IMG/VR virus record: IMGVR_UViG_3300021137_000001
Span: 62,001 to 126,000 of that record
Strand: one strand, 5' to 3'
DNA: 64,000 nt
Shown piece after piece: positions 2,654-58,815 of the stretch. Position 1 is the stretch's first letter, and every line of letters starts with the position of its first letter. The notes under the pieces were generated by a model. The model was not told where the DNA came from and ran no database searches. It worked only from the letters and a program-made list of their open reading frames with translations. The position numbers and the translations under genes were made by a program.

Positions 2654-2710
2654 ATGCTGAATCTTATCTCCAACTATGTAAAAAATTGTTTCAATTGTAA
2701 GTTGACATAA
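2654..2710 (+). pseudogene. Orphan 5' remnant of primase (MLNLISNYVKNCFNCKLT*)
   Basis: MLNLISNY resembles the primase start MINQISDY at 3377; lies directly after the promoter and before the endonuclease. Confidence 0.55.
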
Positions 2711-2718: not shown

Positions 2719-3396
2719 ATGGAAAAATACATTTATCTTATCACTTCACCATCATTGAAAGTTTACGTAGGTCAGTCAATGATATCAATCGAGAAAAAAA
2801 TTCATTCTTATCGAAAATCGGAAAGGTATGTTAATAAATTAACAGGCCGTAAGATTATTAACGCCATCAGAAAATATGGATGGGATAATATGAAGTTTGA
2901 GATAATTGAGTTGTCGGCTGAATGGACAAAAGCAACACTAAATGAACGAGAAATTTTTTGGATAGCATATTATGATTCAGTAAATATTGGATATAATATG
3001 ACAATTGGCGGAGACGGAGTTGATTCTAAATTAGCTGTACAGTTAGCAACAACACATCATGCAACGATGAGTGCAGAAAAGAAACAACAACGTAGAGATA
3101 ATTGTAGTAAAGGTCAGCTTATTCGATTCGAAAATACTCCAGAGTCTGTGCAAACTAAACAAAGAAAAAGTAATTCTCATAAAGGGATATACCTAATAGA
3201 GGCACCCGATGGCAGAACTTGGGAAACTAATATAGGATTAAAAGAGTTTGCTGAACAATACGGCACAGAATTGGATATTACTTATTGGCAGTTGTTTGGT
3301 GCTTATAGAAAATGTTATAATAATAGAATAGTAACTCGCAATAGAATAGATAATAATAAATGGAAGGTCACGCGAATTGATAAATCAGATATCTGA
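2719..3396 (+). mobile_element. Free-standing GIY-YIG homing endonuclease
   Basis: YIYLI...VYVGQS, REIFWI, GYNMTIGGDG; ATAAATA just upstream. Confidence 0.85.
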
Positions 3397-4372
3397 TTAC
3401 ACTATTGCTCTTTGGAAATCAAGAAAAACTAAAAGTAGTTCTGCTGGATGGATTTCTGGAAATGCGCCTTGTTGCATACACAATGGCGAAAGCGCAGATA
3501 CACGCGGCCGAGGTGGATTGATATACGCCGACAATAAATTAACTTGGCATTGCTTTAACTGTTCCTACAAAGCATCATACATACCGGGTCGCCCATTAAC
3601 ATTTAAGTTTCGTAAACTACTTGGTTGGCTAGGTGCAAGTGATGGTGAAGTTAAGCGTTTAGTAATCGAAGCAATTCGCATTAAAGACTTAGTTGGCCCA
3701 ACAGAACATAAAGAAGAAGTTAAAGAAGAGATTGTAATTAAGGCACGTACATTGCCCGATAACATACAATCATTCACTGAACTAACTACCTTACACCCAG
3801 CCGCAGAATATTGTTACGATAGAAAAATCGACTTAACAAAGTATAACTTTTATGTAACTGAAAGTAAACAACACTCATTATATAAACGTGTAATCATTCC
3901 GTGCTACTGGAAGAACAATGTAATTGGCTATACAGCACGTGCTTTTACCGATGATGTTAAGCCAAAGTATCATAACAACTACGAATCAAATTTTGTGTTT
4001 AACACAGACCAACAGCAACGTGATTGGAAGTTTGTTATTGTATGCGAAGGCCCATTTGACGCAATGGCAATAGATGGTGTTGCAGTATTAGGTAATGACA
4101 TTAGTGAAATACAAGCGGATATTATAGATAGCTTGGGTCGAGAAGTTATTGTTGTTGCTGATACTGATGTTAGTGGTGCTAAAACAATAGATGCGGCAAT
4201 TAAGTATGGCTGGAGTGTAAGTTTCCCGATCTGGCAAGAAGATGCTGACTGTAAAGATATCAGCGCAGCAGTAGTCAAGTACGGCAAACTGTTTGTGCTT
4301 AAAAGCATTATTGATGCTAAAGAAACGAGCAAATTAAAAATAGAATTACTACGAAAAAGAATGTATAATTAA
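3377..4372 (+). CDS. DNA primase (T4 gp61-like; Zn finger + TOPRIM)
   Basis: CC...HCFNC zinc motif, CEGPFDAM, DTD and KD TOPRIM motifs; upstream of helicase. Confidence 0.9.
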   Translation: MINQISDYTIALWKSRKTKSSSAGWISGNAPCCIHNGESADTRGRGGLIYADNKLTWHCFNCSYKASYIPGRPLTFKFRKLLGWLGASDGEVKRLVIEAIRIKDLVGPTEHKEEVKEEIVIKARTLPDNIQSFTELTTLHPAAEYCYDRKIDLTKYNFYVTESKQHSLYKRVIIPCYWKNNVIGYTARAFTDDVKPKYHNNYESNFVFNTDQQQRDWKFVIVCEGPFDAMAIDGVAVLGNDISEIQADIIDSLGREVIVVADTDVSGAKTIDAAIKYGWSVSFPIWQEDADCKDISAAVVKYGKLFVLKSIIDAKETSKLKIELLRKRMYN

Positions 4373-7237: not shown

Positions 7238-7495
7238 TTGCAAAAGCGTACTCGTGGCATACTTCAGGAACTCGACGAACTCCTTCAGCATAAGGATAAG
7301 GCAAACCTCATTGAGAGCAGAGCCAATAACATCATTAATGGTGCTATCAACCTTATTAATCACATACGTGAAAACTATGATGCAGAACAAGCTGGTGAAT
7401 TAGAACGACGTCTGCTTAATGCAATTAAAGGACAAGACCCTGCAAAATTTGCACGTGGCATACGGAAACTAAAAGATGATTTGGACGATAAATAA
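7238..7495 (+). CDS. Conserved phage hypothetical protein
   Basis: TTG start with AAGGA SD after ATAAATA promoter. Confidence 0.7.
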   Translation: MQKRTRGILQELDELLQHKDKANLIESRANNIINGAINLINHIRENYDAEQAGELERRLLNAIKGQDPAKFARGIRKLKDDLDDK

Positions 7496-7499
7496 TAGT

Positions 7500-7552
7500 G
7501 TAGTTCGCGGAATTGACGTTCCCAACTACTCTAACGTCTTGGAGGACATCAG
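7500..7552 (-). ncRNA. Two-hairpin structured motif, copy 2 (antisense to the endonuclease leader)
   Basis: Minus strand CTGATGTC/GACGTTAG hairpin plus GTAGTTG-GGAA..TTCC-GCG-AACTAC; compensatory changes versus copy 1. Confidence 0.55.
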
Positions 7553-7553
7553 T

Positions 7554-8108
7554 ATGAATATTTATTACGTCTACGCATATCTTAGAAATAAAGACTCTAT
7601 TACTGCAATCGCAGGTACCCCATATTATATCGGCAAAGGAAAACACAATCGAAAATTAGCCAAACATAGTAATGCTCCTGTACCAACAGATCATTATTAT
7701 ATACACATGATAGCAGAAAGATTACGTGAACAAGAAGCGCACTTATTGGAAATTGAATTAATTACAAAATATGGCAGAAAAGATATAGGGACAGGAATAT
7801 TAAATAATAAAACAGCCGGCGGCGAGGGTTCGTCTGGTCGTATTTTGTCGGCAGATACTATAAGAAAAATGAGTAAACCAAAGTCTGAAGAAACTAAGAA
7901 AAAAATGTCAGCTTCACGTACAGGTAGAATATTTAGTGTTGAAACAAAAGCAAAAATGAAGGCTTCTGCGCTAGCAAGACCACCCAAATCAGAAGAGACT
8001 AGAAGAAAATTGTCAGTAGCAGGCACAGGTAAAACACGCTCAAACGAAACTAAAGAAAAAATGAAATTAGCACAACAGCAGAGATGGAATAATAACGATG
8101 AAGATTAA
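7554..8108 (+). mobile_element. GIY-YIG-family homing endonuclease with NUMOD3-like repeats
   Basis: MNIYYVYAYLR...PYYIGKG, LNNKTAGGEG, KSEETKKKMS repeats; start moved to the ATG after GGAGG. Confidence 0.85.
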
Positions 8109-8508
8109 TGAAATATTAGCTGAATCGGAACTTGATCAATTACTCGATCAACCCGAAGCAGACGAACCGCAGGAACCCGAAGCAGACGAATTCGGCCAGA
8201 AACCTACGCCAAAACTTGATAAAGCCACTAAATTTGCAAATGCTACCGCTGGCGCTATTGGGTCGGTATCTAAAGCAATAGCAAATGCACCTGGTAAAAG
8301 TTATGGTAGTTCATTTATTCAACCCGCTGCACAGTCGAGTAAAGTGCAATCAACACCAGTGACAGCACCAACAATTCAGCCAGGTGTAGTTGCACCAGAA
8401 AATGCAAAGTATCTTAGAACACTTGCAAATAATAAAGTTGCAACTAATCCAACCGGCACACCCGAAATTGATGCTGTACTTAGATCTGCAGGCATGTTAA
8501 AACCATAA
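8098..8508 (+). CDS. Putative virion/internal head protein (MKINEILAES leader)
   Basis: N-terminus identical to 8521; low complexity. Confidence 0.5.
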   Translation: MKINEILAESELDQLLDQPEADEPQEPEADEFGQKPTPKLDKATKFANATAGAIGSVSKAIANAPGKSYGSSFIQPAAQSSKVQSTPVTAPTIQPGVVAPENAKYLRTLANNKVATNPTGTPEIDAVLRSAGMLKP

Positions 8509-9121: not shown

Positions 9122-9409
9122 ATGAAGTTATTTGAAATTAAAAAAGAAACACCAAAATGGTTACTTGCAGAATTAGGTATTCCGTTTGGTGATACAGCGC
9201 AACAAGCTGGACAACAAGCTGGACAACCAGCACAGCAAGCTGGCAGTACCGGTGTATTTAATAATCCACAGGCACTTGCAGCATCATTTGAACAATTTAT
9301 GTCTGCTGGTGGATCAGTTCCTTCTGCATTCCGTGGTGTGTTAAAAGATATTTTAAGCACAGCATTAAGTAAAGTAGAAAGCAAACAAGTTAAAGGCCGT
9401 AGAATTTAA
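9122..9409 (+). CDS. Hypothetical protein; first 17 aa paralogous to 10148
   Basis: MKLFEIKKETPKWLLAE vs MQLHEIQNKSPSWMLVE; QQAG tandem repeats. Confidence 0.6.
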   Translation: MKLFEIKKETPKWLLAELGIPFGDTAQQAGQQAGQPAQQAGSTGVFNNPQALAASFEQFMSAGGSVPSAFRGVLKDILSTALSKVESKQVKGRRI

Positions 9410-9468: not shown

Positions 9469-10173
9469 ATGTACGGTTTCATTTATCTAACAACTTGCAC
9501 TATTAACAATAAAAAATATATAGGATTATGTTCGCATGAATCTATACATAAAGAATTATATTTGGGCAGTGGCAAGATATTAAAAAATGCAGTTAAACGT
9601 TACGGTAAATCTAATTTTACTAGAGTGATATTAGAGGAATGTTCGAGCTGGCAAGAATTATCTGATGCCGAAATTAAATGGATTGCTTACTATAATGCAA
9701 CCACAAATACAGAATTTTACAATATTGACTCAGGCGGGTATGGTGGTGATCCTACTACTATTAAAGAAATTTGGAAAAATAGAACACAAGAACAAAAAGA
9801 TATTATCGGTGACAAAATATCCGCCACTAAGAAACGATTAGGATCAAGTAAAGGTAGTAAAAATTCGATGTACGGTAAACATACGGGTAAATTAGTACAG
9901 GCAGTATGGGATTCGCGCACTAACGAATATAAGAAAGAAATTGGTGCAAAAGTATCAGCTACACGAAAAGAAATGGGATCAGCAAAAGGTGCCAATAATC
10001 CAATGTATGGTAGAAGTGCTATAACTGAAAAAAATCTCAAATGGTATACTAATGGGATAGAAAATAAATACATTACAGAAGGTACACAATCAGATGGTTT
10101 TGTTCGCGGTCGAACTAATTTATCGGGCAACATAGGAAAACGAACAAATGCAACTGCACGAAATACAAAATAA
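9469..10173 (+). mobile_element. GIY-YIG (Seg-like) homing endonuclease
   Basis: GFIYLTT...KKYIG, YLGSG, FYNI; NPMYG repeats. Confidence 0.88.
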
Positions 10174-11395
10174 AAGTCCTAGTTGGATGTTAGTCGAATC
10201 AAAGGCATTATCAATGCATATAGAACACTTAGAAGATTTAATCTTTAATAGTGGCTATGTGGGTGCGCAAGCGGCATTAAACTACGTAGAAAGTTTACGT
10301 GCTATGTTAGCAGAAGGCACAGGAACAACTACACAGCTTACAGTTAAGTGGGACGGTGCCCCAGCAATTATCTGCGGGATTGACCCAAGTGATAGTAAAT
10401 TCTTTGTAGGTACTAAATCAGTATTTGCTAAAGGTGAGCCAAAACGTTGTAAAAATGCAGCAGACATTGAAAAATGGTATGCTCCACAACCAGAGCTTGC
10501 AGCAAAATTAACAGCAGCCTTGCATTATCTCCCTAAACTTGGAATTGGAGGAGTTATTCAAGGCGACTTAATGTTTACTCCGGGCGATGTAAGCACAGTA
10601 TCTATTAATGATGAAGATTGTTATGTGTTTACTCCAAACACAATTACGTATGCAGTACCAGTTGATAGCAACTTAGGTAAACGTATTGCAAAAGCTAAAC
10701 TTGGTATTATATTTCACACTAGCTACGAAGGCACTTCATTAGAAACAATGAAAGCAAACTACGGAGTAAACGTGGGTAGCTTGCATCAAACATCAGCAGT
10801 ATGGTTTGATGATGCAACATATAAAGATTACACTGGTATCGCAAGTTTAACACCGAGTGAAGATGCACAAATTAAACAGCAACTATTGTCTACACTAACT
10901 ACAATGGAAAAGATTGGGCAAGCTCGCTTTGACATTATACTAACTAACAAAGAGTTTGCTCGTAACATCAAGCCATTCATCAATCAAATGATTAGACAAG
11001 GCGAGCACGTTGGCGAACCAATGCAGTTCTTACAAAAGTTTATTGATCATACATCTGCTGAACTAATGAAAGATATTGAAACCTTATCGGGTGGTATTAG
11101 TGGACGTGCGGCACAAGGTCGTATTACTAAGATTAAAGAAAAAGAGCAATGGGTTGCTGATAATGCAAACAATTTGTTAGTTATACTTGCAACATACAAA
11201 AAAGTAATCGAACTTAAACACACGTTAATGCGCAAACTACAACAAGTAGAAAGTATCGGTACATTCCAAAAAACAAACGATGGATATAAAGTAACAACTC
11301 CAGAAGGCTTTGTTGCAATTGGGCACGATGGCGGAGCAATTAAGCTAGTTGATAGACTTGAATTTAGTCGTACTAACTTTGCTCGTAGTGCTTAA
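10148..11395 (+). CDS. Ligase-superfamily nucleotidyltransferase-like protein (DUF6267-like)
   Basis: Motif I KWDG, QGDL, motif IV EGFV, motif V K. Confidence 0.55.
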   Translation: MQLHEIQNKSPSWMLVESKALSMHIEHLEDLIFNSGYVGAQAALNYVESLRAMLAEGTGTTTQLTVKWDGAPAIICGIDPSDSKFFVGTKSVFAKGEPKRCKNAADIEKWYAPQPELAAKLTAALHYLPKLGIGGVIQGDLMFTPGDVSTVSINDEDCYVFTPNTITYAVPVDSNLGKRIAKAKLGIIFHTSYEGTSLETMKANYGVNVGSLHQTSAVWFDDATYKDYTGIASLTPSEDAQIKQQLLSTLTTMEKIGQARFDIILTNKEFARNIKPFINQMIRQGEHVGEPMQFLQKFIDHTSAELMKDIETLSGGISGRAAQGRITKIKEKEQWVADNANNLLVILATYKKVIELKHTLMRKLQQVESIGTFQKTNDGYKVTTPEGFVAIGHDGGAIKLVDRLEFSRTNFARSA

Positions 11396-40659: not shown

Positions 40660-40968
40660 ATGGCAAAAGCAATTGCAAAAGTTAAAACAACTCCAAACTT
40701 GGCTATTAAAGAGCCGAGTATGTACAAAGTCATTTACATTAATGATGATGTTACAACAATGGAATTTGTAATCGAAAGTTTGCTTGTGGTATTTGATATG
40801 GCGCATGATACAGCCACTGATATTACTATTACAATTCATAATGAAGGTAGTGCTGTTGTTGCGCTGTTACCGTATGAGATGGCAGAACAGAAAGGCGTCG
40901 AAGCAACACAACTTGCACGTGCATCTGGCTTCCCACTTGTAGTGAAATTAGAGGCTGACACAAAATGA
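40660..40968 (+). CDS. clpS: ClpS adaptor
   Basis: YKVIYINDDVTTMEFV, IHNEG, AEQK. Confidence 0.92.
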   Translation: MAKAIAKVKTTPNLAIKEPSMYKVIYINDDVTTMEFVIESLLVVFDMAHDTATDITITIHNEGSAVVALLPYEMAEQKGVEATQLARASGFPLVVKLEADTK

Positions 40969-41031
40969 TTAAGTCAGTTTAATAGGTTAAATTGACAGTA
41001 TGTGATAAATATCTATACAAGGGATATTTAT

Positions 41032-41721
41032 ATGTATACAGGATATATTTACATTACTACTAATTTAATTAACAGCCGAGCATATATTGGTAAAAAAAAT
41101 AAATCGACTTTAGATTATTCTTATTATGGATCTGGTACTGTTTTAAAGACAGCAATTAAAAAATATGGTAAAGAAAATTTTAATATCAAAGTATTATATT
41201 GGGCGCAATCAGTAGAAGAACTTGATCTTAAAGAAATCGAATTAATAGAATTATATAGTAAAACTGTTAATTTGTATAATATTGCTAAAGGTGGCACAGG
41301 TGGCGATACGCTAACTAATCACCCAGATCTAAAACAGATACGAGATAAGCAAATTATCGGACTAACGAATTGGCATCATAATATGTCCGAGGATGAAAGA
41401 TCCGAGCACGGAAAAAAAATAAGCAATGCAAAAAAGAATAAATCTAATGGGCACACTGGATTAACTCATAATGCTGCCACAAAAGAAAAAATGTCGCAAG
41501 CATCAAAAGATTATACTAAAACACCAGAATGGAAACTTGCTCATGCTGTTGCCGCTGCAAAACGAAAAAATGTTCCGTTGACAGCAAAATATAAATCTGT
41601 TATAATAGATAATATAGAATACGAATCAGTTGGGCATGCAATGATCGCATTAAATATAAAACATCGAGCAACATTTTATAAATTGATTAAACAACAAAAA
41701 CTACAGGTTGTATACAAATGA
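41032..41721 (+). mobile_element. GIY-YIG (Seg-like) homing endonuclease
   Basis: GYIYITTN...YIG, YYGSG, YNIAKGGTGG. Confidence 0.88.
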
Positions 41722-42176
41722 TTTTTAATAAAATTAAAGAATTAAAAGGGCTAGGACTTAAAATTGGCATAACCTTCTCGTCTTTCGATTTATTGCATGC
41801 GGGTCATATTGCTATGTTAAGCGAAGCAAAGAATCATTGCGATTACTTAATTGCCGGCTTACAAAATAATGCATCGTGGGATAGACCAGAGAAGAACGCA
41901 CCAATACAAAGTATTGTTGAACGACAAATACAACTTGCCGCAACACGTTATGTTGACGAAGTTGTAGTTTACAATACAGAAAGCGACCTCGAAGACATCT
42001 TACTAGCATTACCAATTGATGTACGTGTATTAGGTATTGAATACAGAGATAAAGAATTTACTGGACGCGATATTTGTATTGCTCGCGACATTGAATTAGT
42101 GTATAATAAACGTGATCACTCATTTAGTTCGAGCAGTTTACGTAAACGTATTGCAGAAGCGGAGAGTAAAAAATGA
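41718..42176 (+). CDS. Cytidylyltransferase (TagD-like)
   Basis: FDLLHAGH (HxGH), SSSSLR. Confidence 0.88.
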   Translation: MIFNKIKELKGLGLKIGITFSSFDLLHAGHIAMLSEAKNHCDYLIAGLQNNASWDRPEKNAPIQSIVERQIQLAATRYVDEVVVYNTESDLEDILLALPIDVRVLGIEYRDKEFTGRDICIARDIELVYNKRDHSFSSSSLRKRIAEAESKK

Positions 42177-50207: not shown

Positions 50208-50343
50208 CCCAACAGATATACCGGGTCGAGCAACAATACAATTTCGTTCACAGCAAGAATGTGAACAAGCAAGAGCAACAGTAACAAGCTGGTTAAAATT
50301 TGAGTCTTTTAAGGTAACAACACAATGTCAAAAATCCTCATAG
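50170..50343 (+). CDS. Small secreted peptide (MWILLLLAV...QECEQA), not in the ORF track
   Basis: Hydrophobic N-terminus, two Cys; fills the operon gap. Confidence 0.55.
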   Translation: MWILLLLAVNVSDPTDIPGRATIQFRSQQECEQARATVTSWLKFESFKVTTQCQKSS

Positions 50344-51323
50344 TAACAGATAACTTACGGAGTCAGATTAATGGAGTCAACACAACCTACAAAAATATCG
50401 AACCGTATGCTTATCGTGATGGGTATAGTGTTGTTTATATTGATCCCGGGCAGTTCTCTTATATTGATAGCCCTGGTTATCCTGAAGTCAAACTTTCCTG
50501 GGCTTGGTCAATTGGCGAAAAGATTGAGAAGATACAGCCGGATTATATTCATATACAAACGGAAGGCCCACTTGGACTAGCGGCACGTTTATATTGTAAT
50601 CGACACAATTTAAAATACAATACAAGTTATCATACCAAGTTCCCAGAGTTCTTAAAGAAAATATATCACATACCAGAGTTTTTAACTTACGCATACGTGC
50701 GTTGGTTTCATAAAGATTCTTATAAAATACTAACAACAACACAAACAATGGTTAACGAACTTAAAGCACATGAATTCGTTGCTCCAATTACTTCGTGGAC
50801 ACGTGGAGTTGATAGAGATAACTTAAAGCCATCTATTGTACATGAAGAATATACAATTAAACCAACAGTACTTTACGCAGGACGAGTAAGCAAAGAGAAA
50901 GGACTTGAAGATTTATGCAAGTTACAAGCACACTATAATATTGAGATTGTAGGTGATGGTCCATTTAGAGAATATTTGTATCACACATACAAAGACGTTA
51001 AGTTTTTAGGGTATCAGTCTGGTGAAGAACTAGCCAACAGTTATACACGTGCCGATGTGTTTGCCTTTCCAAGTAGAACAGATACGTTTGGCATTGTTAT
51101 TATTGAAGCGTTAAGTTGCGGTACTCCGGTTGCGGGTTATCCGGTACCAGGACCAATCGATATACTTGAGCAAGGTGTCAATGGTTATATGAATAATGAT
51201 TTAATGGTGGCGATAGAATTATGCTTGCCACTAGATAGAGCAATAGTACAAAAATCAAGTTTAACTTGGACTTGGTTAAACTGTTGGAATGTGTTTAGAA
51301 ACAACTTGATTAAAACTAAATAG
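50325..51323 (+). CDS. GT4 glycosyltransferase
   Basis: YHTKFPE, GRVSKEK, DTFGIVIIEALSCGTPV. Confidence 0.92.
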   Translation: MSKILIVTDNLRSQINGVNTTYKNIEPYAYRDGYSVVYIDPGQFSYIDSPGYPEVKLSWAWSIGEKIEKIQPDYIHIQTEGPLGLAARLYCNRHNLKYNTSYHTKFPEFLKKIYHIPEFLTYAYVRWFHKDSYKILTTTQTMVNELKAHEFVAPITSWTRGVDRDNLKPSIVHEEYTIKPTVLYAGRVSKEKGLEDLCKLQAHYNIEIVGDGPFREYLYHTYKDVKFLGYQSGEELANSYTRADVFAFPSRTDTFGIVIIEALSCGTPVAGYPVPGPIDILEQGVNGYMNNDLMVAIELCLPLDRAIVQKSSLTWTWLNCWNVFRNNLIKTK

Positions 51324-51356
51324 TAGTATATAATGATATTATAGAAAAGGGTGTGT

Positions 51357-51380
51357 ATGAAGATTGGAATTATCGGATAA
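51357..51380 (+). pseudogene. Orphan start of the nucleotide-sugar dehydrogenase (MKIGIIG*)
   Basis: Rossmann-type start; GGAATTATCGG duplicated at 52155-52165. Confidence 0.75.
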
Positions 51381-51387
51381 ATACTTT

Positions 51388-52143
51388 ATGCATAATTCTT
51401 CTCAACCTTATACCTATCTTATTGGATGGAGCAAATATAAAAAATATTATTACGGAGTTAGGTACGCTAAAAATTGTTTACCAACTGATTTATGGATTAA
51501 ATATTTCACCTCATCATTGATTGTTGCATCGACCCGAGTAGAACTCGGCGAGCCGGATATTATACAAGTTCGAAAAATATTTGTAACTAAAGAACAAGCA
51601 AGAAACTGGGAAACAAAGGTATTGAAACGAATGAAGGTAGTTGTTAGCGAAATGTTTCTTAATAAGAATGATAGACCTGCGCCACCAATAAGTAATCGAC
51701 CTATGTCAGAATATAATAAGAAAAAATTATTAGAAGCTAAATTAGGCAAACCTAGATCTGAAGTAACTAAACAAAAAATTAAAGAAGCAAGAGTTAACCA
51801 AGATATGAATTGCCGACTGGGGCATATTGTATCAGTAGAAACAAGACAAAAAATTCGTGATGCAAATTTAGGTAAAACAATGTCAGCTGACACAAAAGAC
51901 AAAATTTCAGCAGGCAACAAAGGAAAACATTTTGATAAACGATCAGTAGAAACAAGACAAAAAATTCGTGATGCAAATTTAGGTAAAACAATGTCAGCTG
52001 ACACAAAAGACAAAATTTCAGCAGGCAACAAAGGGAAACCAAAACCAATCACACAATGCCCGCATTGTTTAAAATTTGGTGGAGTTTCACAAATGCAACA
52101 GTGGCATTTTAATAAATGTAAACTTTTTAAGAAGGAAGTATAA
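51388..52143 (+). mobile_element. GIY-YIG-like homing endonuclease with NUMOD3 repeats
   Basis: PYTYLIGW...YYYGVR, YFTSS, CPHC..WHFNKC. Confidence 0.82.
51831..52034 (+). repeat. Exact 93-bp direct repeat (period 111 nt) inside the endonuclease
   Basis: 51831-51923 equals 51942-52034. Confidence 0.9.
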
Positions 52144-52934
52144 TGGCAATTATCGGAATTATCGGGTTTGGGTATGTCGGTGGCGCAGTAGCAAGTAGCT
52201 ATGCTGAAGAGAAATTATTAATCAACGACCCTATTGTTCATCCAGCATCGTCAGTTAGTTACGCAACAATGATGAAAAAATGTCGTGCAATATTTGTATG
52301 TGTGCCAACTCCGGAATCAGAGGATGGCACTTGTAATATAAGCATTATGACATCAGTATTAAATGGATTAAAAGGTTACGATGGTTTAGTAATCTGCAAA
52401 TGTACTGCTCCTCCCGATATATATAAACAATTAGAACACGACTTAGATCTTAAACTTGTACATGTTCCAGAGTTTTTAACGCAAGCACGTGCAAATGATG
52501 ATTATATCAACCCACATAAAATAGTAGTTGGCTGTAAGAAAAAATTACGCGAAGAAGTTGCTGATGTGATAATGGCAAGTGCTGTTAACTTTGACAGAGA
52601 TAATATCGAATACTGTGATATTGCTACTGCAAGTTTCTTTAAGTACTTCGCTAACAATATGCTGGCTATCAAAGTTGTATTGAACAACGAGTTTTCTGTA
52701 TTAGCAGGTGCGATGGGTGTTAAGTGGGAAGATATTGCTAGCATAGCATCAACCGATTCGAGACTCGGTGACACACATTGGTCAGTACCGGGCCCAGACG
52801 GACAAGTTGGCTTTGGTGGTGCTTGCTTTCCAAAAGATACAGAAGCATTTGCAAAACTTGCGAAGCCACATAATGTAAAATTATCTGTGCTTAATGCCGC
52901 AATACTGGCTAATAAACTAATGCGTGACGAATAA
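52143..52934 (+). CDS. UDP-glucose/GDP-mannose dehydrogenase-like protein
   Basis: GFGYVG, CVPTP, PEFL, GFGGACFPKD. Confidence 0.9.
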   Translation: MAIIGIIGFGYVGGAVASSYAEEKLLINDPIVHPASSVSYATMMKKCRAIFVCVPTPESEDGTCNISIMTSVLNGLKGYDGLVICKCTAPPDIYKQLEHDLDLKLVHVPEFLTQARANDDYINPHKIVVGCKKKLREEVADVIMASAVNFDRDNIEYCDIATASFFKYFANNMLAIKVVLNNEFSVLAGAMGVKWEDIASIASTDSRLGDTHWSVPGPDGQVGFGGACFPKDTEAFAKLAKPHNVKLSVLNAAILANKLMRDE

Positions 52935-52962
52935 TAAATATAAGATAATTAAGAGAAACTCG

Positions 52963-54018
52963 ATGAACAAGATATTATTCGTACTCAAACGTAAAGACAA
53001 CTTTAACGCAGTTGTTGACTCGCACGTCGGGGTGTCGACTGGACTTTATAACTCTGCAAGTTTTATGAACAACATGCTTAACGATAGCGGAGTTGAAAGC
53101 AAGATGGTTGTTGTTCCAGATAACAACGCCATCGATAGAGAAGTAACAGCATATCGCCCAACACATGTAATCATCGAAGCACTTTGGGTAGTGCCAGAAA
53201 AGTTTATTATTCTAAGCAAACTCCACCCGACAGTAACATGGATTATTAGACTACATAGTGAAATGCCATTCTTAGCAGGTGAAGGTATGGCAATGGATTG
53301 GATTGGCGAATACGCAAGTTTTAAAAATATTGTTATTGCCGCCAACGCACCACGTATGTTAAGTGAAGTACGTTTCTTCTTGCAATGTAAGAATGGTTGG
53401 ACAGACGAGAAAACAAACAGCAAAGTAATTTATTTTCCTAATTATTATCCAACAGAGTTTGTACAAAAACCTTATATGGCCGCCGACAAAGAATTTATTG
53501 ACATTGGCTGCTTTGGTGCAGTCCGTCCGTTAAAGAATCATATGCTACAAGCATTTGCTTCACTTAAATTTGCAAATAAGATAGGTAAGAAATTACGCTT
53601 TCATATTAACTCTGGCAGATTAGAAATGAAAGGCGAACCAGTGTTAAACAACTTACGTGGACTGTTTCAACACTTAGCAGAAAAAGGTCATGTAGTTATC
53701 AGTCATGGTTGGACACATAGAGATGACTTCTTATTGCTATGTGCGCAGATGGATATTGGTATGCAAGTTAGTTTCTCTGAAACATTTAACATAGTTGGAG
53801 CTGACTTTATTAGTCAAGGTGTTCCGCTATTGGGAAGTAGTGAGATTCCGTGGTCGAGTAATACATTTAATAGTGACCCAACAAGTAGTGATGATATATT
53901 TCAGAAGTTAATGCTAACACATAACAATCCTGAGAAGAATATTATGCAACATCAGGGATTATTAACTAAGTATGTAAGTGAAACACAAGGTATATGGCAA
54001 GACTATTTTAAAGGGTAA
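52963..54018 (+). CDS. Glycosyltransferase-like protein (GT-B)
   Basis: GAVRPLKN, SETFNIVGAD. Confidence 0.65.
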   Translation: MNKILFVLKRKDNFNAVVDSHVGVSTGLYNSASFMNNMLNDSGVESKMVVVPDNNAIDREVTAYRPTHVIIEALWVVPEKFIILSKLHPTVTWIIRLHSEMPFLAGEGMAMDWIGEYASFKNIVIAANAPRMLSEVRFFLQCKNGWTDEKTNSKVIYFPNYYPTEFVQKPYMAADKEFIDIGCFGAVRPLKNHMLQAFASLKFANKIGKKLRFHINSGRLEMKGEPVLNNLRGLFQHLAEKGHVVISHGWTHRDDFLLLCAQMDIGMQVSFSETFNIVGADFISQGVPLLGSSEIPWSSNTFNSDPTSSDDIFQKLMLTHNNPEKNIMQHQGLLTKYVSETQGIWQDYFKG

Positions 54019-54022
54019 CAAA

Positions 54023-54241
54023 ATGAGCGTACATCACAAGAAACATCATGTAAAGATACACAAATGGATACACGGGATATTAGAAGTAGTACATCACAAT
54101 TTTGAATCATTGGAAGAAGCATTAGGATTTGCTGATGAACATTCTGCTAACAAAGAACATTCCGGACATCAAGTTAAAGTGTACAACGAAGATAACGAAT
54201 TAGTACATACTACTAACTGCTATCACGATACTTACGCATAA
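54023..54241 (+). CDS. His-rich small protein
   Basis: 72 aa, His-rich. Confidence 0.55.
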   Translation: MSVHHKKHHVKIHKWIHGILEVVHHNFESLEEALGFADEHSANKEHSGHQVKVYNEDNELVHTTNCYHDTYA

Positions 54242-55293: not shown

Positions 55294-55369
55294 GGGTCGA
55301 TAACTCACTCGGCGAGAGTACTGTGCTCATAACGCAGAAGGCAGGGATCATAACCCTGGCGACCCACCA
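55294..55369 (+). tRNA. tRNA-Met/Ile2 (CAT) with atypical T-loop
   Basis: Cloverleaf, loop CTCATAA, CCA; T-loop ATCATAA. Confidence 0.75.
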
Positions 55370-55374
55370 ACAAA

Positions 55375-55452
55375 GCGTCCGTAGCTCATCTGGACTAGAG
55401 CATGGGATTTCTACTCCCAGGGTAGCTGGTTCGAATCCAGCCGGGCGCACCA
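55375..55452 (+). tRNA. tRNA-Arg (TCT)
   Basis: TGGGA-TTTCTAC-TCCCA, GGTTCGAATCC, CCA. Confidence 0.92.
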
Positions 55453-55473
55453 CTTTTTATATAAGGAAACACA

Positions 55474-55665
55474 ATGAGAACAAAGTCAGAATTTGATATT
55501 GCAATGGAAGAATTTTTAGCCAACGGTGGCGAAGTAAAACAAATAGCACGTGGCGTACAAAGTGAAACAGCAACAACAAACTTCTGGGGCGCACCAAAGA
55601 AAAAAGCCGCAGTAGAAGCAGTAAATGAGTTAGGCGCAACAGGTATTGACGTAATAGAAGAATAA
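55474..55665 (+). CDS. Small hypothetical protein
   Basis: AAGGA SD; EEFLANGGEVKQI motif. Confidence 0.65.
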   Translation: MRTKSEFDIAMEEFLANGGEVKQIARGVQSETATTNFWGAPKKKAAVEAVNELGATGIDVIEE

Positions 55666-55722
55666 TAATATCAGTTCAAAAATAAAATATAAATATATTA
55701 GTAATAATGGAGGTAACTCGAC

Positions 55723-56370
55723 TTGCACAATCCTGTAGAAAAACCAACTTGGTTATATAAACCTATCGATGATATCCCTGAATTGAATAAAATTCAAAAG
55801 GAATGTTTTCGAATCTATTCGGCTGTAAAGAAAGATATATGCAAAGATGTTGGCTGGGCCATTGCTGGAATAGAATTAGATATAATGAAAAAACTTGCAC
55901 CAAATTATATTAATTTTTTAAAAAAATTAGGGTTATACGAGATTTATGCCGGTACAGCATTTTCTGCTAGTATAGGGATACAAAAATATCCTTGTCCTGT
56001 ACACGTTGATTGTAAAGACTGGCGCCAATTACCATTTTCACTTAATATACCAGTTGTTGGATGTGAGGATAGTTATACTGTTTTTTATGATGTTGATGAA
56101 TCATCCGATCCTGCAAACGCATTACCAGATACATGGGATAATAATTATATGAAAATGAATAAAATTGAAGGAGTGGTCGGATATTCCGAAAAAACAGCAA
56201 AAGAAATTGGCAGAATGCCTGCTACCCAACCTGCATTTGTAAACATTGGTATTCCTCACCGCCCTGTGACAAATCATACTAATCTAAGATTAGTTATGTT
56301 ATCGAGATTTACACCTGACATATTTGATTATGTAAATAATGACATATTTAAAACTAAATTATCAGAATAA
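55723..56370 (+). CDS. Putative 2OG-Fe(II)/cupin-like protein
   Basis: HVD...SLNIP...H pattern. Confidence 0.5.
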   Translation: MHNPVEKPTWLYKPIDDIPELNKIQKECFRIYSAVKKDICKDVGWAIAGIELDIMKKLAPNYINFLKKLGLYEIYAGTAFSASIGIQKYPCPVHVDCKDWRQLPFSLNIPVVGCEDSYTVFYDVDESSDPANALPDTWDNNYMKMNKIEGVVGYSEKTAKEIGRMPATQPAFVNIGIPHRPVTNHTNLRLVMLSRFTPDIFDYVNNDIFKTKLSE

Positions 56371-56411
56371 TACCAGTTCAAAAATAAATGATAAATAATT
56401 AGATAAAGTGC

Positions 56412-56440
56412 TTGACAAGAGTATAAATAGAATATATAAT
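56412..56440 (+). promoter_or_regulatory. Promoter of the tRNA array (sigma70 with nested late box)
   Basis: TTGACA-N17-TATAAT with TATAAATA inside the spacer. Confidence 0.85.
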
Positions 56441-56474
56441 AGTTGTATAAGTTAATAAGGAAGTGAGAAAACAA

Positions 56475-56600
56475 ATGTTCAAATCGTTACATCAGTTTAA
56501 GATATCAACACTCGTGCAGTTATGCGGCGTGTCTTCTTATTGGTCAGCGATTGAGATGAATACGAGTGATCGCGCACCGAATAGAAAGGGTTTAAGTTAA
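56475..56600 (+). CDS. Putative attenuator leader peptide (41 aa, all 20 amino acids)
   Basis: MFKSLHQFKISTLVQLCGVSSYWSAIEMNTSDRAPNRKGLS*; last codons form the antiterminator 5' arm. Confidence 0.65.
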   Translation: MFKSLHQFKISTLVQLCGVSSYWSAIEMNTSDRAPNRKGLS

Positions 56601-56661
56601 CGTTTATTATTATATATGAATTTTTACTTAAACCTTAGAATTAAAAACTCTAAGGTTTTTT
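56587..56661 (+). terminator. Antiterminator/terminator switch ahead of the tRNA array
   Basis: 56587-56597 pairs with 56626-56636; alternative terminator CCTTAGA/TCTAAGG plus T6. Confidence 0.75.
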
Positions 56662-56775
56662 GCTTTTAGCAGTAAGTGTTTTGGAAACGAGGTCCATAAC
56701 TAAACACTATAAAGATTGTAAGTTGAACGGGCGGAACTAGGGATGAAGCACCTTGTGTGGTGTGAAAAATCTAGC

Positions 56776-56856
56776 ATAATAAAGTACATTAATCGGCAAC
56801 TAGGTCCCACGCAATGTGGATTATGTCAGAGGCGAGTAATTAGTGTGCTTTATTAT
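56776..56856 (+). ncRNA. Long-stem small RNA unit 1
   Basis: 18-bp closing stem with two G-U pairs. Confidence 0.5.
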
Positions 56857-56900
56857 ACGCATTCACATGAGTGCGGTACACAATTTGTAGTGCATTTTGT

Positions 56901-56975
56901 CAGGGTATAGCTCAGCCTGGCCAGAGTCCTCGGTTTGGAACCGAGTTGTCGTAAGTTCGAATCTTACTACCCTGA
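56901..56975 (+). tRNA. tRNA-Pro (TGG), no encoded CCA
   Basis: CTCGG-TTTGGAA-CCGAG; acceptor stem extended by a flanking inverted repeat. Confidence 0.88.
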
Positions 56976-57080
56976 CAAAATGCATTACTTAAAAAGAGGT
57001 TAACACATACGGTAATTGGTAGTATAATAGCTACTTGAAGTTAAGTAATACGCTCTTTAACAGTTTGGAAGTTTTACAAT

Positions 57081-57153
57081 ATCGCATTCATCTAGTGGCC
57101 TAAGATACTGCCCTTTCACGGCAGGTACACGGATTCGAATTCCGTATGCGATA
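57081..57153 (+). tRNA. tRNA-Glu (TTC), no encoded CCA
   Basis: CTGCC-CTTTCAC-GGCAG; ATCGCAT/ATGCGAT acceptor. Confidence 0.88.
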
Positions 57154-57182
57154 CACATAGTAAATTTTGTATAAATACAAGT

Positions 57183-57794
57183 ATGACATATTACTACTTG
57201 TATCAAATCACTAATTTAGTGAATGCAAAAATTTACGTTGGAGTACATAAAACGAAATCATTAGATGACGGATATATGGGCTCTGGAAAAATTATTCAAT
57301 GTGCAATTAAAAAACACGGAATTGATAATTTTAAAAAAGACATACTTGAGACTTTTGACACATCAGAAGCTATGTATGCACGTGAGAAAGAAATAGTAAC
57401 AGATCAGTTTCTGTTACGCGAAGATACCTATAACTTACGTAGAGGCGGAACTGGCGGATTTGATTATATAAACAAGCAACCATGGGTGCATACTACAAAC
57501 AGGATAATAGGAGATATAAAGAAAAGTAAAACATTAAAAGGTAGACGCCCTTCTGAAAATACGTTAATAGCAGTAAGGTTAATGCATCAAGACGGAAGAG
57601 TAAAGTATGATACGTTTACTGGTAAACAGCATACCATCGAAACTAAACAAAAAATGTCAATTGCGAAAAAAGGAAAAGGATGCAATCAGCATAACAGTCA
57701 ATTCGGTACTATATGGATAACGGATGGTATAAGTAACAAAAAAATAAAGAAAGATGTTACTATTCCAGAAGGATGGAATAGAGGTAGAAGTTAA
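57183..57794 (+). mobile_element. GIY-YIG (SegB-like) homing endonuclease in the tRNA array
   Basis: YLYQITN...IYVGVH, YMGSG, YNLRRGG. Confidence 0.88.
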
Positions 57795-57798
57795 GACC

Positions 57799-57904
57799 AT
57801 ATTAAAACATATTTGACCAAGTCGGTGTTCCTTGATGCTAGGATTAGAGCGGACAGCAGTCCGCGAGATGTAGTTGCGATATTACAGCAAGTGTGTTTTA
57901 ATAT
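57799..57904 (+). ncRNA. Long-stem small RNA unit 2
   Basis: 17-bp closing stem with G-U pairs; internal GCGGAC/GTCCGC hairpin. Confidence 0.5.
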
Positions 57905-57915
57905 AGTAAGTCTAT

Positions 57916-57989
57916 TGGCTCATGGTGTAGTGGTAGCACAACAGGTTTTGATCCTGTTAGTTGTAGTTCGATTCTACATGGGCCTGCCA
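57916..57989 (+). tRNA. tRNA-Gln (TTG)
   Basis: ACAGG-TTTTGAT-CCTGT, CCA. Confidence 0.9.
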
Positions 57990-58058
57990 AGTTTTAATGG
58001 AGTGGAAATACCATACTATCAGTCCGTTATGTATAAATACATATATAGGAGAACTGAT

Positions 58059-58457
58059 ATGTTTAAGAACAGTAAGAAACAAGGTGACGCTGGATTAGGG
58101 CAAGCAATAGCATATTTTACAATGAAAGGATATGATGTTGCGTTGCCACTAACAGATAGCGCAGACTGGGATATGATTGTTGAGATAGATGGTGAACTTA
58201 AAAGAGTCCAAGTTAAAACATCTAAACAACTATCTAAAACGGGTATAATGATGTTTAATGCTAATGTAAATGGCGGCAACATGTCATTTAATAAAAAACC
58301 TAAACTTATACCAGAACAACAATGGGATTTATTGTTCTTACATCACTTAGTGACAAATAAGCAAGCATTGATTCCTAAAGAAGCACTAACTACAAAAGGT
58401 CAAGTGAACTTAGGTAGTAGTCAATGTAAGTATAAAGATTTTATGATTAATGGATGA
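58059..58457 (+). mobile_element. PD-(D/E)XK endonuclease (I-Ssp6803I-like family)
   Basis: KQGD..., WDMIVE..RVQVKT; AGGAG SD; stop overlaps tRNA-Tyr. Confidence 0.75.
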
Positions 58458-58537
58458 GCGGCGCAGTTGGAGAGGCGCGGGAGACTGTAAATCTCTTTTC
58501 CCTGAATGAGTAGGTTCGAATCTTACCTCATCCACCA
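58452..58537 (+). tRNA. tRNA-Tyr (GTA)
   Basis: GGAGA-CTGTAAA-TCTCT, long variable arm, CCA. Confidence 0.9.
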
Positions 58538-58542
58538 ATTTA

Positions 58543-58619
58543 GTTGTGTCGTCGGTTCGAAGCCAACCTGTAATCAAGCGAAATAGCAGTTACAGTAGTT
58601 TACTTGGTAAAACAACAAC
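58543..58619 (+). ncRNA. Circularly permuted, anticodon-less tRNA-like element
   Basis: T-arm and 3' acceptor strand precede the 5' acceptor strand and D-arm; ends pair GTTGT/ACAAC. Confidence 0.65.
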
Positions 58620-58651
58620 AATTTTTGTAGTAAATTTAATAGGAGCAACAC

Positions 58652-58672
58652 ATGAAGCGAGTTAAACTTTAG
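58652..58672 (+). CDS. Mini-ORF MKRVKL* upstream of tRNA-Lys
   Basis: AGGAG SD 6 nt before ATG; AAG and AAA codons. Confidence 0.65.
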   Translation: MKRVKL

Positions 58673-58743: not shown

Positions 58744-58815
58744 GTATGGTGAAATTGGTTATCACATGGGACTTTTAATCCTTCGTTCAGAGTTCAAGTC
58801 TCTGTGCTCCTACCA
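58740..58815 (+). tRNA. tRNA-Lys (TTT)
   Basis: Loop CTTTTAA; weak anticodon stem TGGGA/TCCTT; CCA. Confidence 0.85.

What the first reader, a model, noticed from the sequence alone, without database searches (positions are those of the whole stretch)
51357..52170. Endonuclease inserted in the first codons of a gene and supplying a new start
Seen: orphan MKIGIIG* (51357-80) before the endonuclease and MAIIGIIGFG after it, with GGAATTATCGG on both sides; the orphan's stop is part of the element's ATAAATA promoter. The same pattern appears at primase (MLNLISNY vs MINQISDY), the cytidylyltransferase (AAATGATT at about 40963 and 41716), 7476/8097 (GATGA) and possibly 9122/10148. Inference: intron-less elements that invade coding sequence and repair it with a recoded, translationally coupled N-terminus, which puts the host gene under the element's promoter.
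Basis: partly seen in the sequence, partly recalled or inferred. Interest (0 to 1): 0.66.

Follow-up and report, generated by a model that had tools for sequence, protein, structure and literature searches.

The report
Endonuclease genes that replace gene starts
In this 329-kb freshwater jumbo phage, mobile endonuclease genes sit inside the first codons of other genes, leaving the old start as a dead stub and bringing a new start and N-terminus; this is a little-described way for selfish DNA to invade coding sequence without an intron.

Summary
At 51357-51380 a 7-codon stub (MKIGIIG, stop) is followed by an ATAAATA motif and a 251-aa SegE-like GIY-YIG/NUMOD3 endonuclease gene (51388-52143). 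After it, on a TAATG overlap, comes a UDP-glucose-dehydrogenase-like gene starting MAIIGIIGFG. An element-free relative with the same gene order (L003) starts MKIGIIGFGYVGG, so the stub is the ancestral start. Contigs from two independent metagenome runs join 51376 directly to 52216 with 50 different letters between. That is a natural element-free allele with about 99% identical flanks, and it shows a roughly 73-nt donor tract in the window's gene. The same anatomy was confirmed with element-free relatives at all eight sites tested: five in the window (primase, 8098 gene, DUF6267, cytidylyltransferase, UGDH) and three elsewhere in the genome. Relatives show stages of an element life cycle: empty site, element with stub, element without stub, and element lost with the recoded start kept. 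No intron was detectable. The ancestral promoter is still upstream with no terminator, so "host gene placed under the element's promoter" is only partly right. The closest precedent found is the mirror image: fungal mitochondrial endonuclease ORFs that replace gene C-termini.

The parts
51306..51334 (+). Ancestral sigma70-like promoter of the UGDH-like gene (TTGATT-17-TATAAT), now in front of the orphan
   Evidence: best match in the region, 10 of 12. A similar TATAAT-like box sits upstream of the intact gene in element-free L003.
51357..51380 (+). Orphan start: 7 ancestral codons (MKIGIIG) plus a stop, keeping the ancestral ribosome-binding site
   Evidence: L003 starts MKIGIIGFGYVGG. Natural element-free contigs match the window up to 51376.
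51377..51383 (+). ATAAATA, a T4-late-promoter-like motif and the left end of the insert; it supplies the orphan's TAA
   Evidence: The motif lies within -110..+60 of 28 of 32 endonuclease gene starts against 35 of 219 control ORFs.
51388..52143 (+). Free-standing homing endonuclease gene (251 aa): SegE-like GIY-YIG N-domain plus NUMOD3 repeats
   Evidence: NUMOD3 E=7e-11. PHROG 314 'homing endonuclease' E=1e-17. Atlas feature score 0.96 and structure TM 0.89 to SegE_GIY-YIG/NUMOD3 clusters. Absent from L003 and from contigs in runs X16 and X20.
51831..52039 (+). 111-nt tandem duplication (98-99% identical) inside the endonuclease gene, doubling one NUMOD3 module
   Evidence: (D1).
52143..52215 (+). 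Replacement start and donor-derived (co-converted) first ~24 codons of the UGDH-like gene
   Evidence: Element-free contigs have 50 different letters in place of 52166-52215 and match again from 52216.
52143..52934 (+). UGDH-like host gene (263 aa) read from the new start; its ATG overlaps the endonuclease stop (TAATG), with GAAGGAAG 5-12 nt upstream
   Evidence: PF03721, PF00984.
2654..2710 (+). Orphan primase start (10 ancestral codons MLNLISNYVK, then 8 foreign codons and a TAA inside ACATAAATA), behind the ancestral TTGACT-17-TATAAT promoter
   Evidence: element-free relatives start MLN(L/I)ISD(Y/F)(V/I)K.
2719..3396 (+). GIY-YIG endonuclease gene at the primase site
   Evidence: PF01541 at 24.2 bits against a 22.6 cutoff. 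64% identical homologs at the same site in L111-114, L140 and L145.
3377..4372 (+). Primase with a TTG replacement start overlapping the endonuclease 3' end by 20 nt; the first ~180 nt are a donor tract
   Evidence: allele-specific N-terminal signature. (37-67% identity to L082 over 180 nt, then 90-97%).
7476..7553 (+). Orphan ATG of the 8098 gene (only ATGA retained), in frame with the endonuclease ORF; contains GATAAATA and a conserved hairpin leader
   Evidence: (relatives read aaagATGAAGATTAATGAA).
7554..8108 (+). NUMOD3 endonuclease gene at the 8098 site (probable true start MNIYYVYAYLR)
8098..8508 (+). Host gene (136 aa, unknown function) restarted inside the endonuclease 3' end
9122..9409 (+). 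95-aa orphan ORF: 17 ancestral DUF6267 codons (9122-9172) fused to unrelated Q/A-rich sequence
9469..10173 (+). SegE-like GIY-YIG endonuclease gene at the DUF6267 site
   Evidence: PF19835 at 27.9 bits against a cutoff of 25. 97% identical in L407; only its last 19 codons remain in L405 and L409.
10148..11395 (+). DUF6267 gene with a recoded start (MQLHEIQNKSPSW), overlapping the endonuclease 3' end by 26 nt
   Evidence: identical in amino acids to L408 from HIEHLEDLIF onward.
40965..40982 (+). Orphan cytidylyltransferase start (ATG ATT plus 3 foreign codons and a stop) on the ancestral ATGA overlap with the upstream gene
41032..41721 (+). SegE-like GIY-YIG endonuclease gene (GATAAATA at 41004-41011) ending in an ATGA overlap
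41718..42176 (+). Cytidylyltransferase-like host gene restarted at the duplicated acaaATGATT
   Evidence: PF01467.

Best explanation
These are free-standing homing endonuclease cassettes, mostly SegE-like GIY-YIG/NUMOD3 with one HNH type, that live inside the first 1-17 codons of phage genes. Each cassette carries a late-type ATAAATA promoter, the endonuclease gene, and a replacement 5' end for the host gene: a ribosome-binding site inside the endonuclease 3' end, a start codon overlapping or abutting its stop, and 1-60 recoded codons from a diverged donor allele. The original promoter, ribosome-binding site and first codons stay upstream as a short dead ORF. Shown: the insertion anatomy, the ancestral status of the orphan, the donor tract, presence/absence polymorphism, and loss stages. 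Inferred: (1) The endonuclease cuts the element-free allele near the point where orphan homology ends, and the split, recoded site makes the carrier immune. (2) Spread is by double-strand-break repair, with the promoter plus orphan as the left homology arm and the gene body as the right arm. (3) The host gene is still transcribed from its old promoter through the element, and is translated by coupling or by the embedded ribosome-binding site. (4) Endonuclease translation is held back on early transcripts by a hairpin that uses orphan sequence, and is released on transcripts starting after ATAAATA.
For: The orphan equals the ancestral start at 8 of 8 sites tested against element-free relatives: UGDH, primase, gp46-like, second dehydrogenase, cytidylyltransferase, DUF6267, and the 8098 gene and gp55-like gene. 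A natural element-free allele with about 99% identical flanks, broken exactly at 51376, occurs in two runs from different studies; small contigs from inside the element are also present in run X16. Sharp donor-tract boundaries: about 180 nt in primase, 45-60 nt in the second dehydrogenase, 15-30 nt in gp46-like and about 73 nt in UGDH. The element-linked primase N-terminus is conserved at protein level, with synonymous changes, across phages whose primases share only 60-65% identity, and it accompanies two different endonuclease families. Life-cycle stages: a longer orphan in L111, orphan and early promoter deleted in L140 and L407, and endonuclease lost but recoded start kept in L405, L406 and L409. 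No intron. The ancestral promoter is retained and there is no terminator. ATAAATA is enriched at endonuclease genes, 28 of 32 against 35 of 219. A hairpin sequesters the AUG only in the long transcript. The endonuclease identity rests.
Against: No cleavage, transcription or translation data exist: no RNA run holds the locus and the host is unknown. The hairpin is only modestly better than shuffles (z = -1.9; 8 of 200 shuffles fold as well). Pfam does not call a GIY-YIG domain in the 51388 protein itself and the profile comparison was uninformative. How the first orphan arose at each site is not shown. Ordinary homing between collinear genomes would not create one, so an initial illegitimate or one-sided repair event has to be assumed. 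Stop/start overlaps are common in phage genomes, so they are weak evidence for coupling.
Confidence: 0.85

Rival explanations
1. The endonuclease gene sits in a self-splicing group I (or II) intron. The orphan is exon 1 and splicing restores the original reading frame.
For: Phage endonuclease genes are often intron-borne, and short N-terminal exons have been missed by annotation before, as with the ICP1 terminase (PMC10448857). The orphan and the host gene are in the same frame at the UGDH site (51357 and 52143 are 786 nt apart).
Against: No intron family matches even at E<=10 across 51000-52600, and only tRNAs reach gathering score in the whole window. Only 7 nt separate the orphan stop from the endonuclease ATG and nothing follows its stop, so there is no room for a ribozyme core outside the ORF. 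The downstream gene has its own start, its own ribosome-binding site and a duplicated N-terminus, which an intron would not need. L405, L406 and L409 keep the recoded start with no orphan at all, and L140 and L407 lack the orphan too. The element-linked N-terminus is conserved as protein.
Confidence: 0.03
2. A transposon-like insertion that made a target-site duplication. The flanking repeats (11 nt at UGDH, about 10 at the cytidylyltransferase, 14 at gp46-like) would be duplications made by a staggered cut.
For: Short direct repeats flank the insert at several sites.
Against: Repeat length varies from 5 to more than 27 nt. At the primase, second dehydrogenase and DUF6267 sites the two copies are diverged homologs, not identical copies. 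The foreign tract extends well beyond the repeat. There are no terminal inverted repeats and no transposase; the only ORF is a homing endonuclease. GIY-YIG enzymes leave 2-nt 3' overhangs (established knowledge; also stated for SegB in the PMC2330249 abstract).
Confidence: 0.04
3. The element is ancestral, and the element-free alleles arose by deletion between the flanking repeats. The orphan would then be a by-product of an old duplication rather than of an invasion.
For: Deletion does happen: L405, L406 and L409 have lost the endonuclease gene, and L140 and L407 have lost the orphan.
Against: Element-free alleles dominate among relatives: 79 of 79 at the second dehydrogenase site (excluding the locus identical to this genome), 79 of 80 loci at the cytidylyltransferase site, and most at the primase, gp46-like and gp55-like sites. 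The natural element-free UGDH allele is not a repeat-to-repeat deletion: it carries 50 different letters where the window has its donor tract. True deletion products keep the recoded start, unlike the common element-free alleles.
Confidence: 0.05
4. The small upstream ORFs are regulatory leader peptides that evolved in place, and their resemblance to the downstream N-termini is coincidental.
For: They keep a promoter and a ribosome-binding site. At three sites (UGDH, primase, second dehydrogenase) they end just before an endonuclease ATG that has no Shine-Dalgarno sequence of its own, so they may well be translated.
Against: They are identical or nearly identical to the true gene starts of relatives, together with the same upstream sequence. 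One has already lost its ATG (gp55-like site), and several relatives have deleted them.
Confidence: 0.02

Closest known systems
Free-standing Seg-type GIY-YIG homing endonucleases of T4-like phages (intronless homing: SegF, SegG, SegE, SegB)
   Same: A free-standing GIY-YIG nuclease with NUMOD3 DNA-binding modules, its own late/middle-type promoter, variable presence among relatives, and co-conversion of flanking host sequence (review PMC2988022; here).
   Different: The T4 seg and mob genes are described as lying between genes. Here the insert lies inside the first codons of the target gene, leaves an orphan start and supplies a replacement N-terminus. I found no description of this in the papers I could search.
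Gene-splitting endonuclease insertions (mobE in Aeh1 nrdA, mobA between T4 genes 60 and 39, seg43 in phage 25 gene 43)
   Same: An endonuclease gene inside a coding sequence without an intron; the downstream piece acquires its own translation start (PMC2988022).
   Different: In those cases both pieces are functional polypeptides that reassemble. Here the upstream piece is a 2-17-codon stub with no evident function, and the downstream gene is complete because the lost codons are duplicated in recoded form.
Fungal mitochondrial mobile endonuclease ORFs (mORFs) that replace gene C-termini (Allomyces macrogynus atp6; Glomus atp6, atp9, cox2, nad3)
   Same: An endonuclease ORF travels with a foreign copy of a gene terminus. 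The native terminus is left beside it as a duplicate that matches close relatives, while the inserted copy is divergent mainly at the DNA level (PMC3630166). The pattern is the same.
   Different: It is the mirror image: 3' end against 5' end. The 5' version must also bring a start codon and a ribosome-binding site, and it leaves the old promoter driving a dead mini-ORF. Other differences: phage rather than mitochondrion, and separate overlapping cistrons rather than in-frame fusions.
Intron-encoded I-TevI-type regulation (late promoter inside a hairpin that hides the start site on early transcripts)
   Same: An ATAAATA motif lies just upstream of the ATG, and a predicted hairpin includes the AUG only in read-through transcripts (paradigm in PMC2988022).
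   Different: There is no intron, the 5' arm of the hairpin is orphan coding sequence, and the statistical support is weak.

Membership tests
GIY-YIG (SegE-like) free-standing homing endonuclease | GIY-YIG catalytic domain | tested here: inconclusive
   For the 51388 protein, Pfam finds only NUMOD3 and hhalign against the genome's clear GIY-YIG genes was uninformative. Its paralog scores below threshold for PF19835 (19.1 bits against 25). The Atlas features (0.96) and predicted structure (TM 0.89 over residues 2-99) point to SegE_GIY-YIG/NUMOD3 clusters. For the 2719, 9469 and 41002 proteins the Pfam cutoffs are met.
GIY-YIG (SegE-like) free-standing homing endonuclease | Modular DNA-binding region (NUMOD3 repeats) | tested here: met
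   PF07460 E=7e-11. Two near-identical modules arise from a 111-nt tandem duplication.
GIY-YIG (SegE-like) free-standing homing endonuclease | Free-standing: not inside an intron or intein | tested here: met
   No intron model matches. It is a separate ORF with its own start and stop.
GIY-YIG (SegE-like) free-standing homing endonuclease | Presence/absence polymorphism at a fixed site, with co-conversion of flanks | tested here: met
   Element-free contigs in runs X16 and X20. Relatives with and without the element. Tract boundaries.
GIY-YIG (SegE-like) free-standing homing endonuclease | Site-specific cleavage of the element-free allele and resistance of the carrier allele | not testable with these tools
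   Needs purified protein and DNA substrates.
Group I intron with endonuclease ORF | Ribozyme core (P3-P9) and splice-site pairing | tested here: not met
   No match at E<=10 in 51000-52600 and none at gathering score in the window. There are 7 nt and 0 nt of non-ORF sequence at the two ends of the insert.
Transposon or insertion sequence with target-site duplication | Terminal inverted repeats, a transposase, and a fixed-length perfect duplication | tested here: not met
   No terminal inverted repeats. The only ORF is an endonuclease. Repeat length and identity vary between sites.
Endonuclease cassette with replacement gene terminus (fungal mORF type) | Two copies of a gene terminus flank the endonuclease ORF; the displaced copy matches close relatives and the in-use copy is divergent | tested here: met
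   Met at 8 of 8 sites, but at the 5' rather than the 3' end. The definition is taken from PMC3630166.

The most novel reading that the evidence does not exclude
Phage homing endonucleases have a general 'start-swapping' strategy with three parts. (1) By nesting in the first codons of a gene, the cassette uses the gene's own promoter and first codons as its left homology arm. It may also use them as a launch pad for its own translation, by termination-reinitiation after the stub, and as one arm of a timing hairpin. (2) The recoded N-terminus it brings is the immunity determinant. (3) That recoded N-terminus outlives the endonuclease, as in L405, L406 and L409. Endonuclease traffic would then be a major and so far unrecognised driver of N-terminal sequence diversity and mosaicism in essential phage genes. 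Paralogous endonucleases sitting in the Rossmann-motif codons of two paralogous dehydrogenase genes would mark motif-guided jumps to new targets.
Probability: 0.35. Interest if true: 0.75.

Novelty: new variant of a known kind. Interest (0 to 1): 0.64.

Why it matters
It shows a third way for a homing endonuclease to live inside a coding sequence. The two known ways are to hide in an intron or intein, or to split the gene into two working pieces. Here the element carries a spare gene start. This has several consequences:
- The orphan/new-start pairs mark probable endonuclease target sites at near base resolution, so cleavage specificity becomes directly testable.
- They explain small spurious ORFs and unusual TTG or overlapping starts in phage annotations.
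- They give a concrete mechanism for sharp, localised N-terminal mosaicism in conserved phage genes, including cases where the endonuclease has since been lost.
- The natural allele pairs (with and without the element, about 99% identical flanks) are ready-made material for studying homing in uncultured phages.

Tried and rejected
- **Nucleotide search of the phage collection** with 50300-53000 found nothing. Protein search gave only distant UGDH hits. The useful relatives came from IMG/VR.
- **BLASTP of the 95-aa ORF (9122) against the window's own DUF6267** showed no homology. This was a false negative: the gene's present N-terminus is the recoded one. Comparison with element-free relatives showed the match.
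- **A genome-wide score** of upstream peptides against downstream N-termini with an empirical null was too insensitive (best p about 0.01), because the peptides are short and other Rossmann starts inflate the null. It still pointed to two further sites, which were then confirmed.
- **Group I intron:** rejected.
- **Transposon with target duplication:** rejected.
- **hhalign of the 51388 N-domain** against the genome's GIY-YIG genes was uninformative with such shallow alignments.
- **Solved structures:** no relative by sequence.
- **RNA evidence:** no RNA run holds the locus, so expression could not be examined.
- **Runs X12 and X13** held only fragments of the element-bearing form.
Full report
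**Setting.** The window is bases 62001-126000 of a 329,321-bp virus record with direct terminal repeats. GC content is 37%. By primase similarity its nearest cultured relatives are jumbo phages such as Agrobacterium phage Atu_ph07 (38% aa), Sinorhizobium phage Phosso and Pseudomonas phage PA5oct. Runs that hold it are freshwater, lake and freshwater-sediment metagenomes. An iterated phmmer search of the genome's ORFs found about 33 endonuclease-like ORFs of GIY-YIG and HNH types, most with NUMOD3 modules; 11 lie in the window.

**The observation.**
- A 7-codon ORF (MKIGIIG, stop) lies at 51357-51380.
- Its TAA lies within ATAAATA (51377-51383).
- A 251-aa ORF runs from ATG 51388 to its stop at 52141-52143.
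- A 263-aa ORF starts at 52143 (MAIIGIIGFGYVGG) on a TAATG overlap, with GAAGGAAG just upstream.
- GGAATTATCGG flanks the insert at 51366-51376 and 52155-52165.

The downstream protein has the NAD-binding and central domains of the UDP-glucose/GDP-mannose dehydrogenase family, and the upstream gene is a family 4 glycosyltransferase. The inserted ORF has NUMOD3 repeats and matches PHROG 314 'homing endonuclease' over its whole length. Its first 100 residues resemble SegE-like GIY-YIG clusters by language-model features and by predicted structure (TM 0.89). Pfam itself does not call the catalytic domain, and a shallow profile comparison was uninformative.

**The decisive test at this site.** Among 80 related loci from IMG/VR, L003 has the same glycosyltransferase-to-dehydrogenase order at about 80% amino-acid identity, with only about 45 nt between the genes and no endonuclease. 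Its gene begins MKIGIIGFGYVGGAVASSYA, behind a similar TATAAT-like box. None of about 20 relatives inspected begins MAIIG, so the orphan is the ancestral start.

Independent support comes from public reads. In runs X16 and X20, from two different studies, a contig joins 51376 directly to 52216 with 50 other letters in between. In X20 the flanks differ from the window at 1 of 314 and 2 of 263 positions. This natural element-free allele breaks exactly where the orphan's ancestral sequence ends. It is not a repeat-to-repeat deletion, because the 50 letters replace window 52166-52215. The window's first ~24 codons (52143-52215) are therefore a foreign, co-converted tract. Run X16 also holds small contigs from inside the endonuclease gene, so both forms appear to occur in one sample. 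Contig depths cannot be used to rank them.

**The pattern is systematic.** I applied the same test wherever the pattern was claimed or found, and it held at all eight sites.

| Site | Orphan | Present start | Element-free relatives |
|---|---|---|---|
| Primase | MLNLISNYVK + 8 foreign codons, 2654-2710, behind TTGACT-17-TATAAT | MINQISDY from TTG 3377, overlapping the endonuclease 3' end | Same promoter, start MLN(L/I)ISD(Y/F)(V/I)K |
| 8098 gene | ATG 7476; only ATGA retained, in frame with the endonuclease ORF | ATG 8098 (aacgATGA-AGATT) | aaagATGAAGATTAATGAA |
| DUF6267 | 95-aa ORF 9122-9409; first 17 codons ancestral | MQLHEIQNKSPSW at 10148 | MKLFEIKKQTPQWLLA |
| Cytidylyltransferase | ATG ATT + 3 foreign codons, 40965-40982, on the ancestral ATGA overlap | acaaATGATT at 41718 | MIFNK on an ATGA overlap with the upstream gene |
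| UGDH | MKIGIIG, 51357-51380 | MAIIGIIGFG at 52143 | MKIGIIGFGYVGG (L003) |
| Second dehydrogenase (genome 133.5 kb) | MSSQLKTVGFIGIGKL | MNNVGFVGLGKL | L260 (93% aa): MSSQLKTVGFVGIGKLGL; 79 of 79 relatives lack the element |
| gp46/SbcC-like (genome 308 kb, HNH-type endonuclease) | (L)FKIKNLTV on the ancestral TAATTG junction with the gp47-like gene | MAFRIKNLTV | Same junction in L169, L170, L193, L194 |
| gp55-like (genome 305 kb) | Decayed; ATG has become ATC | MARRVNYLNN | L492 (99% aa): MARKVNYLNN behind identical upstream sequence |

At the 8098 site the insertion also changes the C-terminus of the upstream gene.

**Recoded N-termini travel with the endonuclease.**
- The window's primase is 90-97% identical in DNA to element-free L082 from about nucleotide 180 onward, but only 37-67% identical before that.
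- Its first ~55 residues share a signature (LWK.GRKTK...SGNAPCC) with every element-bearing relative. Those relatives' primases are only 60-65% identical overall, and some carry a different endonuclease family. Element-free alleles share a different signature (ILPAKRKT...SFNAPCC).
- Differences among the element-linked alleles are often synonymous, so this segment is translated.
- Tract lengths differ by site: about 45-60 nt at the second dehydrogenase, 15-30 nt at gp46-like, about 70 nt at DUF6267 and almost nothing at the 8098 and cytidylyltransferase sites.

**Life cycle.** Relatives show every stage:
- Empty site: most loci.
- Element with orphan: the window, and L111 with a 17-codon primase orphan against 10 codons here.
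- Element with the orphan and early promoter deleted: L140 and L407.
- Endonuclease lost but the recoded start retained: L405 and L409 also keep its last 19 codons as a detectable match, and L406 reads the same upstream of the start.

The last class shows that the new start alone suffices to express the host gene. It also shows that the recoded N-terminus is a lasting scar of endonuclease passage.

**Regulatory anatomy.** ATAAATA resembles the T4 late promoter TATAAATA; that resemblance is from established knowledge. It lies within -110..+60 of 28 of 32 endonuclease starts against 35 of 219 control ORFs, and the genome holds only 125 copies in all.

The best sigma70-like promoter in 50300-54100 is at 51306-51334, just upstream of the orphan, and there is no terminator-like site in the region. 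The host gene should therefore still be reached by its ancestral promoter.

Seven of the eight host genes start on or inside the endonuclease stop. That is compatible with coupling, but such overlaps are common in phages.

At three sites (UGDH, primase, second dehydrogenase) the endonuclease ATG has no Shine-Dalgarno sequence. It lies 7-8 nt after the orphan stop at the UGDH and primase sites and about 30 nt after it at the second dehydrogenase site. Reinitiation after the stub is therefore possible.

A predicted hairpin pairs the orphan's end plus ATAAATA with the first endonuclease codons, and it is absent from a transcript starting after the motif. This matches the T4 paradigm reviewed in PMC2988022, but the z-score is only -1.9.

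**Rivals.** A transposon-type target duplication does not fit the variable, often diverged repeats, the absence of terminal inverted repeats, or the long donor tracts. 'Element ancestral, empty sites derived' does not fit the distribution among relatives or the 50 replaced letters.

**How the first orphan arose.** This is not shown. Ordinary homing between collinear genomes would place the endonuclease gene cleanly upstream of the gene. An orphan requires that, at least once, the left junction formed inside the recipient's coding sequence, for example by the one-sided, microhomology-mediated repair known from T4 (PMC2988022). Once formed, the orphan and its promoter are an ordinary left homology arm.

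One hint of target-guided jumping comes from the two closest endonuclease paralogs (66% identical over their N-terminal ~120 residues; 56% over residues 3-200). They sit at nearly the same place in the Rossmann GxGxxG codons of two paralogous dehydrogenase genes. The second site also carries an extra frame-shifted relic (GFVGIG) between its orphan and the promoter.

**Comparison with known systems.** T4 seg and mob genes are described as intergenic. Three phage cases of gene splitting by endonuclease genes are reviewed, in all of which both halves function (PMC2988022). The nearest conceptual match is in fungal mitochondria. There, mobile endonuclease ORFs insert near the 3' end of atp6, atp9, cox2 or nad3 with a foreign C-terminal segment, and the native C-terminus is left downstream (PMC3630166). 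The present case is the 5' mirror image in a phage. It has the added requirements of a start codon and a ribosome-binding site, and the added consequence of a live promoter driving a dead mini-ORF. The library lacks most subscription journals, so prior description cannot be excluded.

**Verdict.** It is extended to eight sites, to natural allele pairs and to a loss series. The cleavage sites, the translational coupling and the role of the promoter remain inferences.

Noticed in passing
window 7488-7556 (+); looser copy about 7132-7200 (-); also genome 310889(+), 240080(-), 237480(-), 59136(-): A conserved structured leader sits directly downstream of GATAAATA in front of at least five endonuclease genes of different families. 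It has an invariant outer stem (GUAGUU/AACUAC) and an inner stem with compensatory changes between copies (GGAA/UUCC, GGGU/ACCC, GAUA/UAUC, GAUG/CAUC), followed by a Shine-Dalgarno sequence and AUG. No Rfam family matches.
   Followed up: partly
window 51831-52039: A 111-nt tandem duplication (98-99% identical) inside the endonuclease gene doubles one NUMOD3 module. It looks like a recent change to the DNA-binding region.
   Followed up: partly
L161:960-1110 (genome about 133460-133610): Between the orphan of the second dehydrogenase and the endonuclease promoter lies a second, frame-shifted relic of a Rossmann start (GFVGIG). It ends in ATCGG just before TATAAATA, like the UGDH junction, so it may be a remnant of an earlier host site carried along by the cassette.
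   Followed up: partly
window 9173-9409: After 17 ancestral DUF6267 codons the orphan ORF continues for 78 codons of unrelated Q/A-rich sequence (QQAGQQAGQPAQQAG...) of unknown origin that belongs to the insert. It matches no PHROG family.
   Followed up: partly
window 35650-36241: Two overlapping ORFs (95 and 133 aa) together look like one GIY-YIG/NUMOD3 endonuclease gene broken by a frameshift.
   Followed up: no
window 55294-61353: A cluster of 13 tRNA genes has an endonuclease gene (57183-57794) among them, reminiscent of segB in the T4 tRNA region.
   Followed up: no
window 20740-21387: An endonuclease gene lies between a 772-aa ORF and a 366-aa ORF on ATGA overlaps. Its listed start overlaps the upstream ORF's end. 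It was not tested for an orphan or for a changed C-terminus of the upstream gene.
   Followed up: no
L115-L118 (relatives), upstream of the primase: A different 251-aa GIY-YIG endonuclease family occupies the same primase site and is linked to the same variant primase N-terminus. Its C-terminal residues resemble those of the window's enzyme where the two ORFs overlap.
   Followed up: no
window 52143-52934 and 52924-54018: The UGDH-like protein is short (263 aa) and lacks the C-terminal UDP-binding domain. The overlapping 364-aa downstream ORF has no Pfam match.
   Followed up: no
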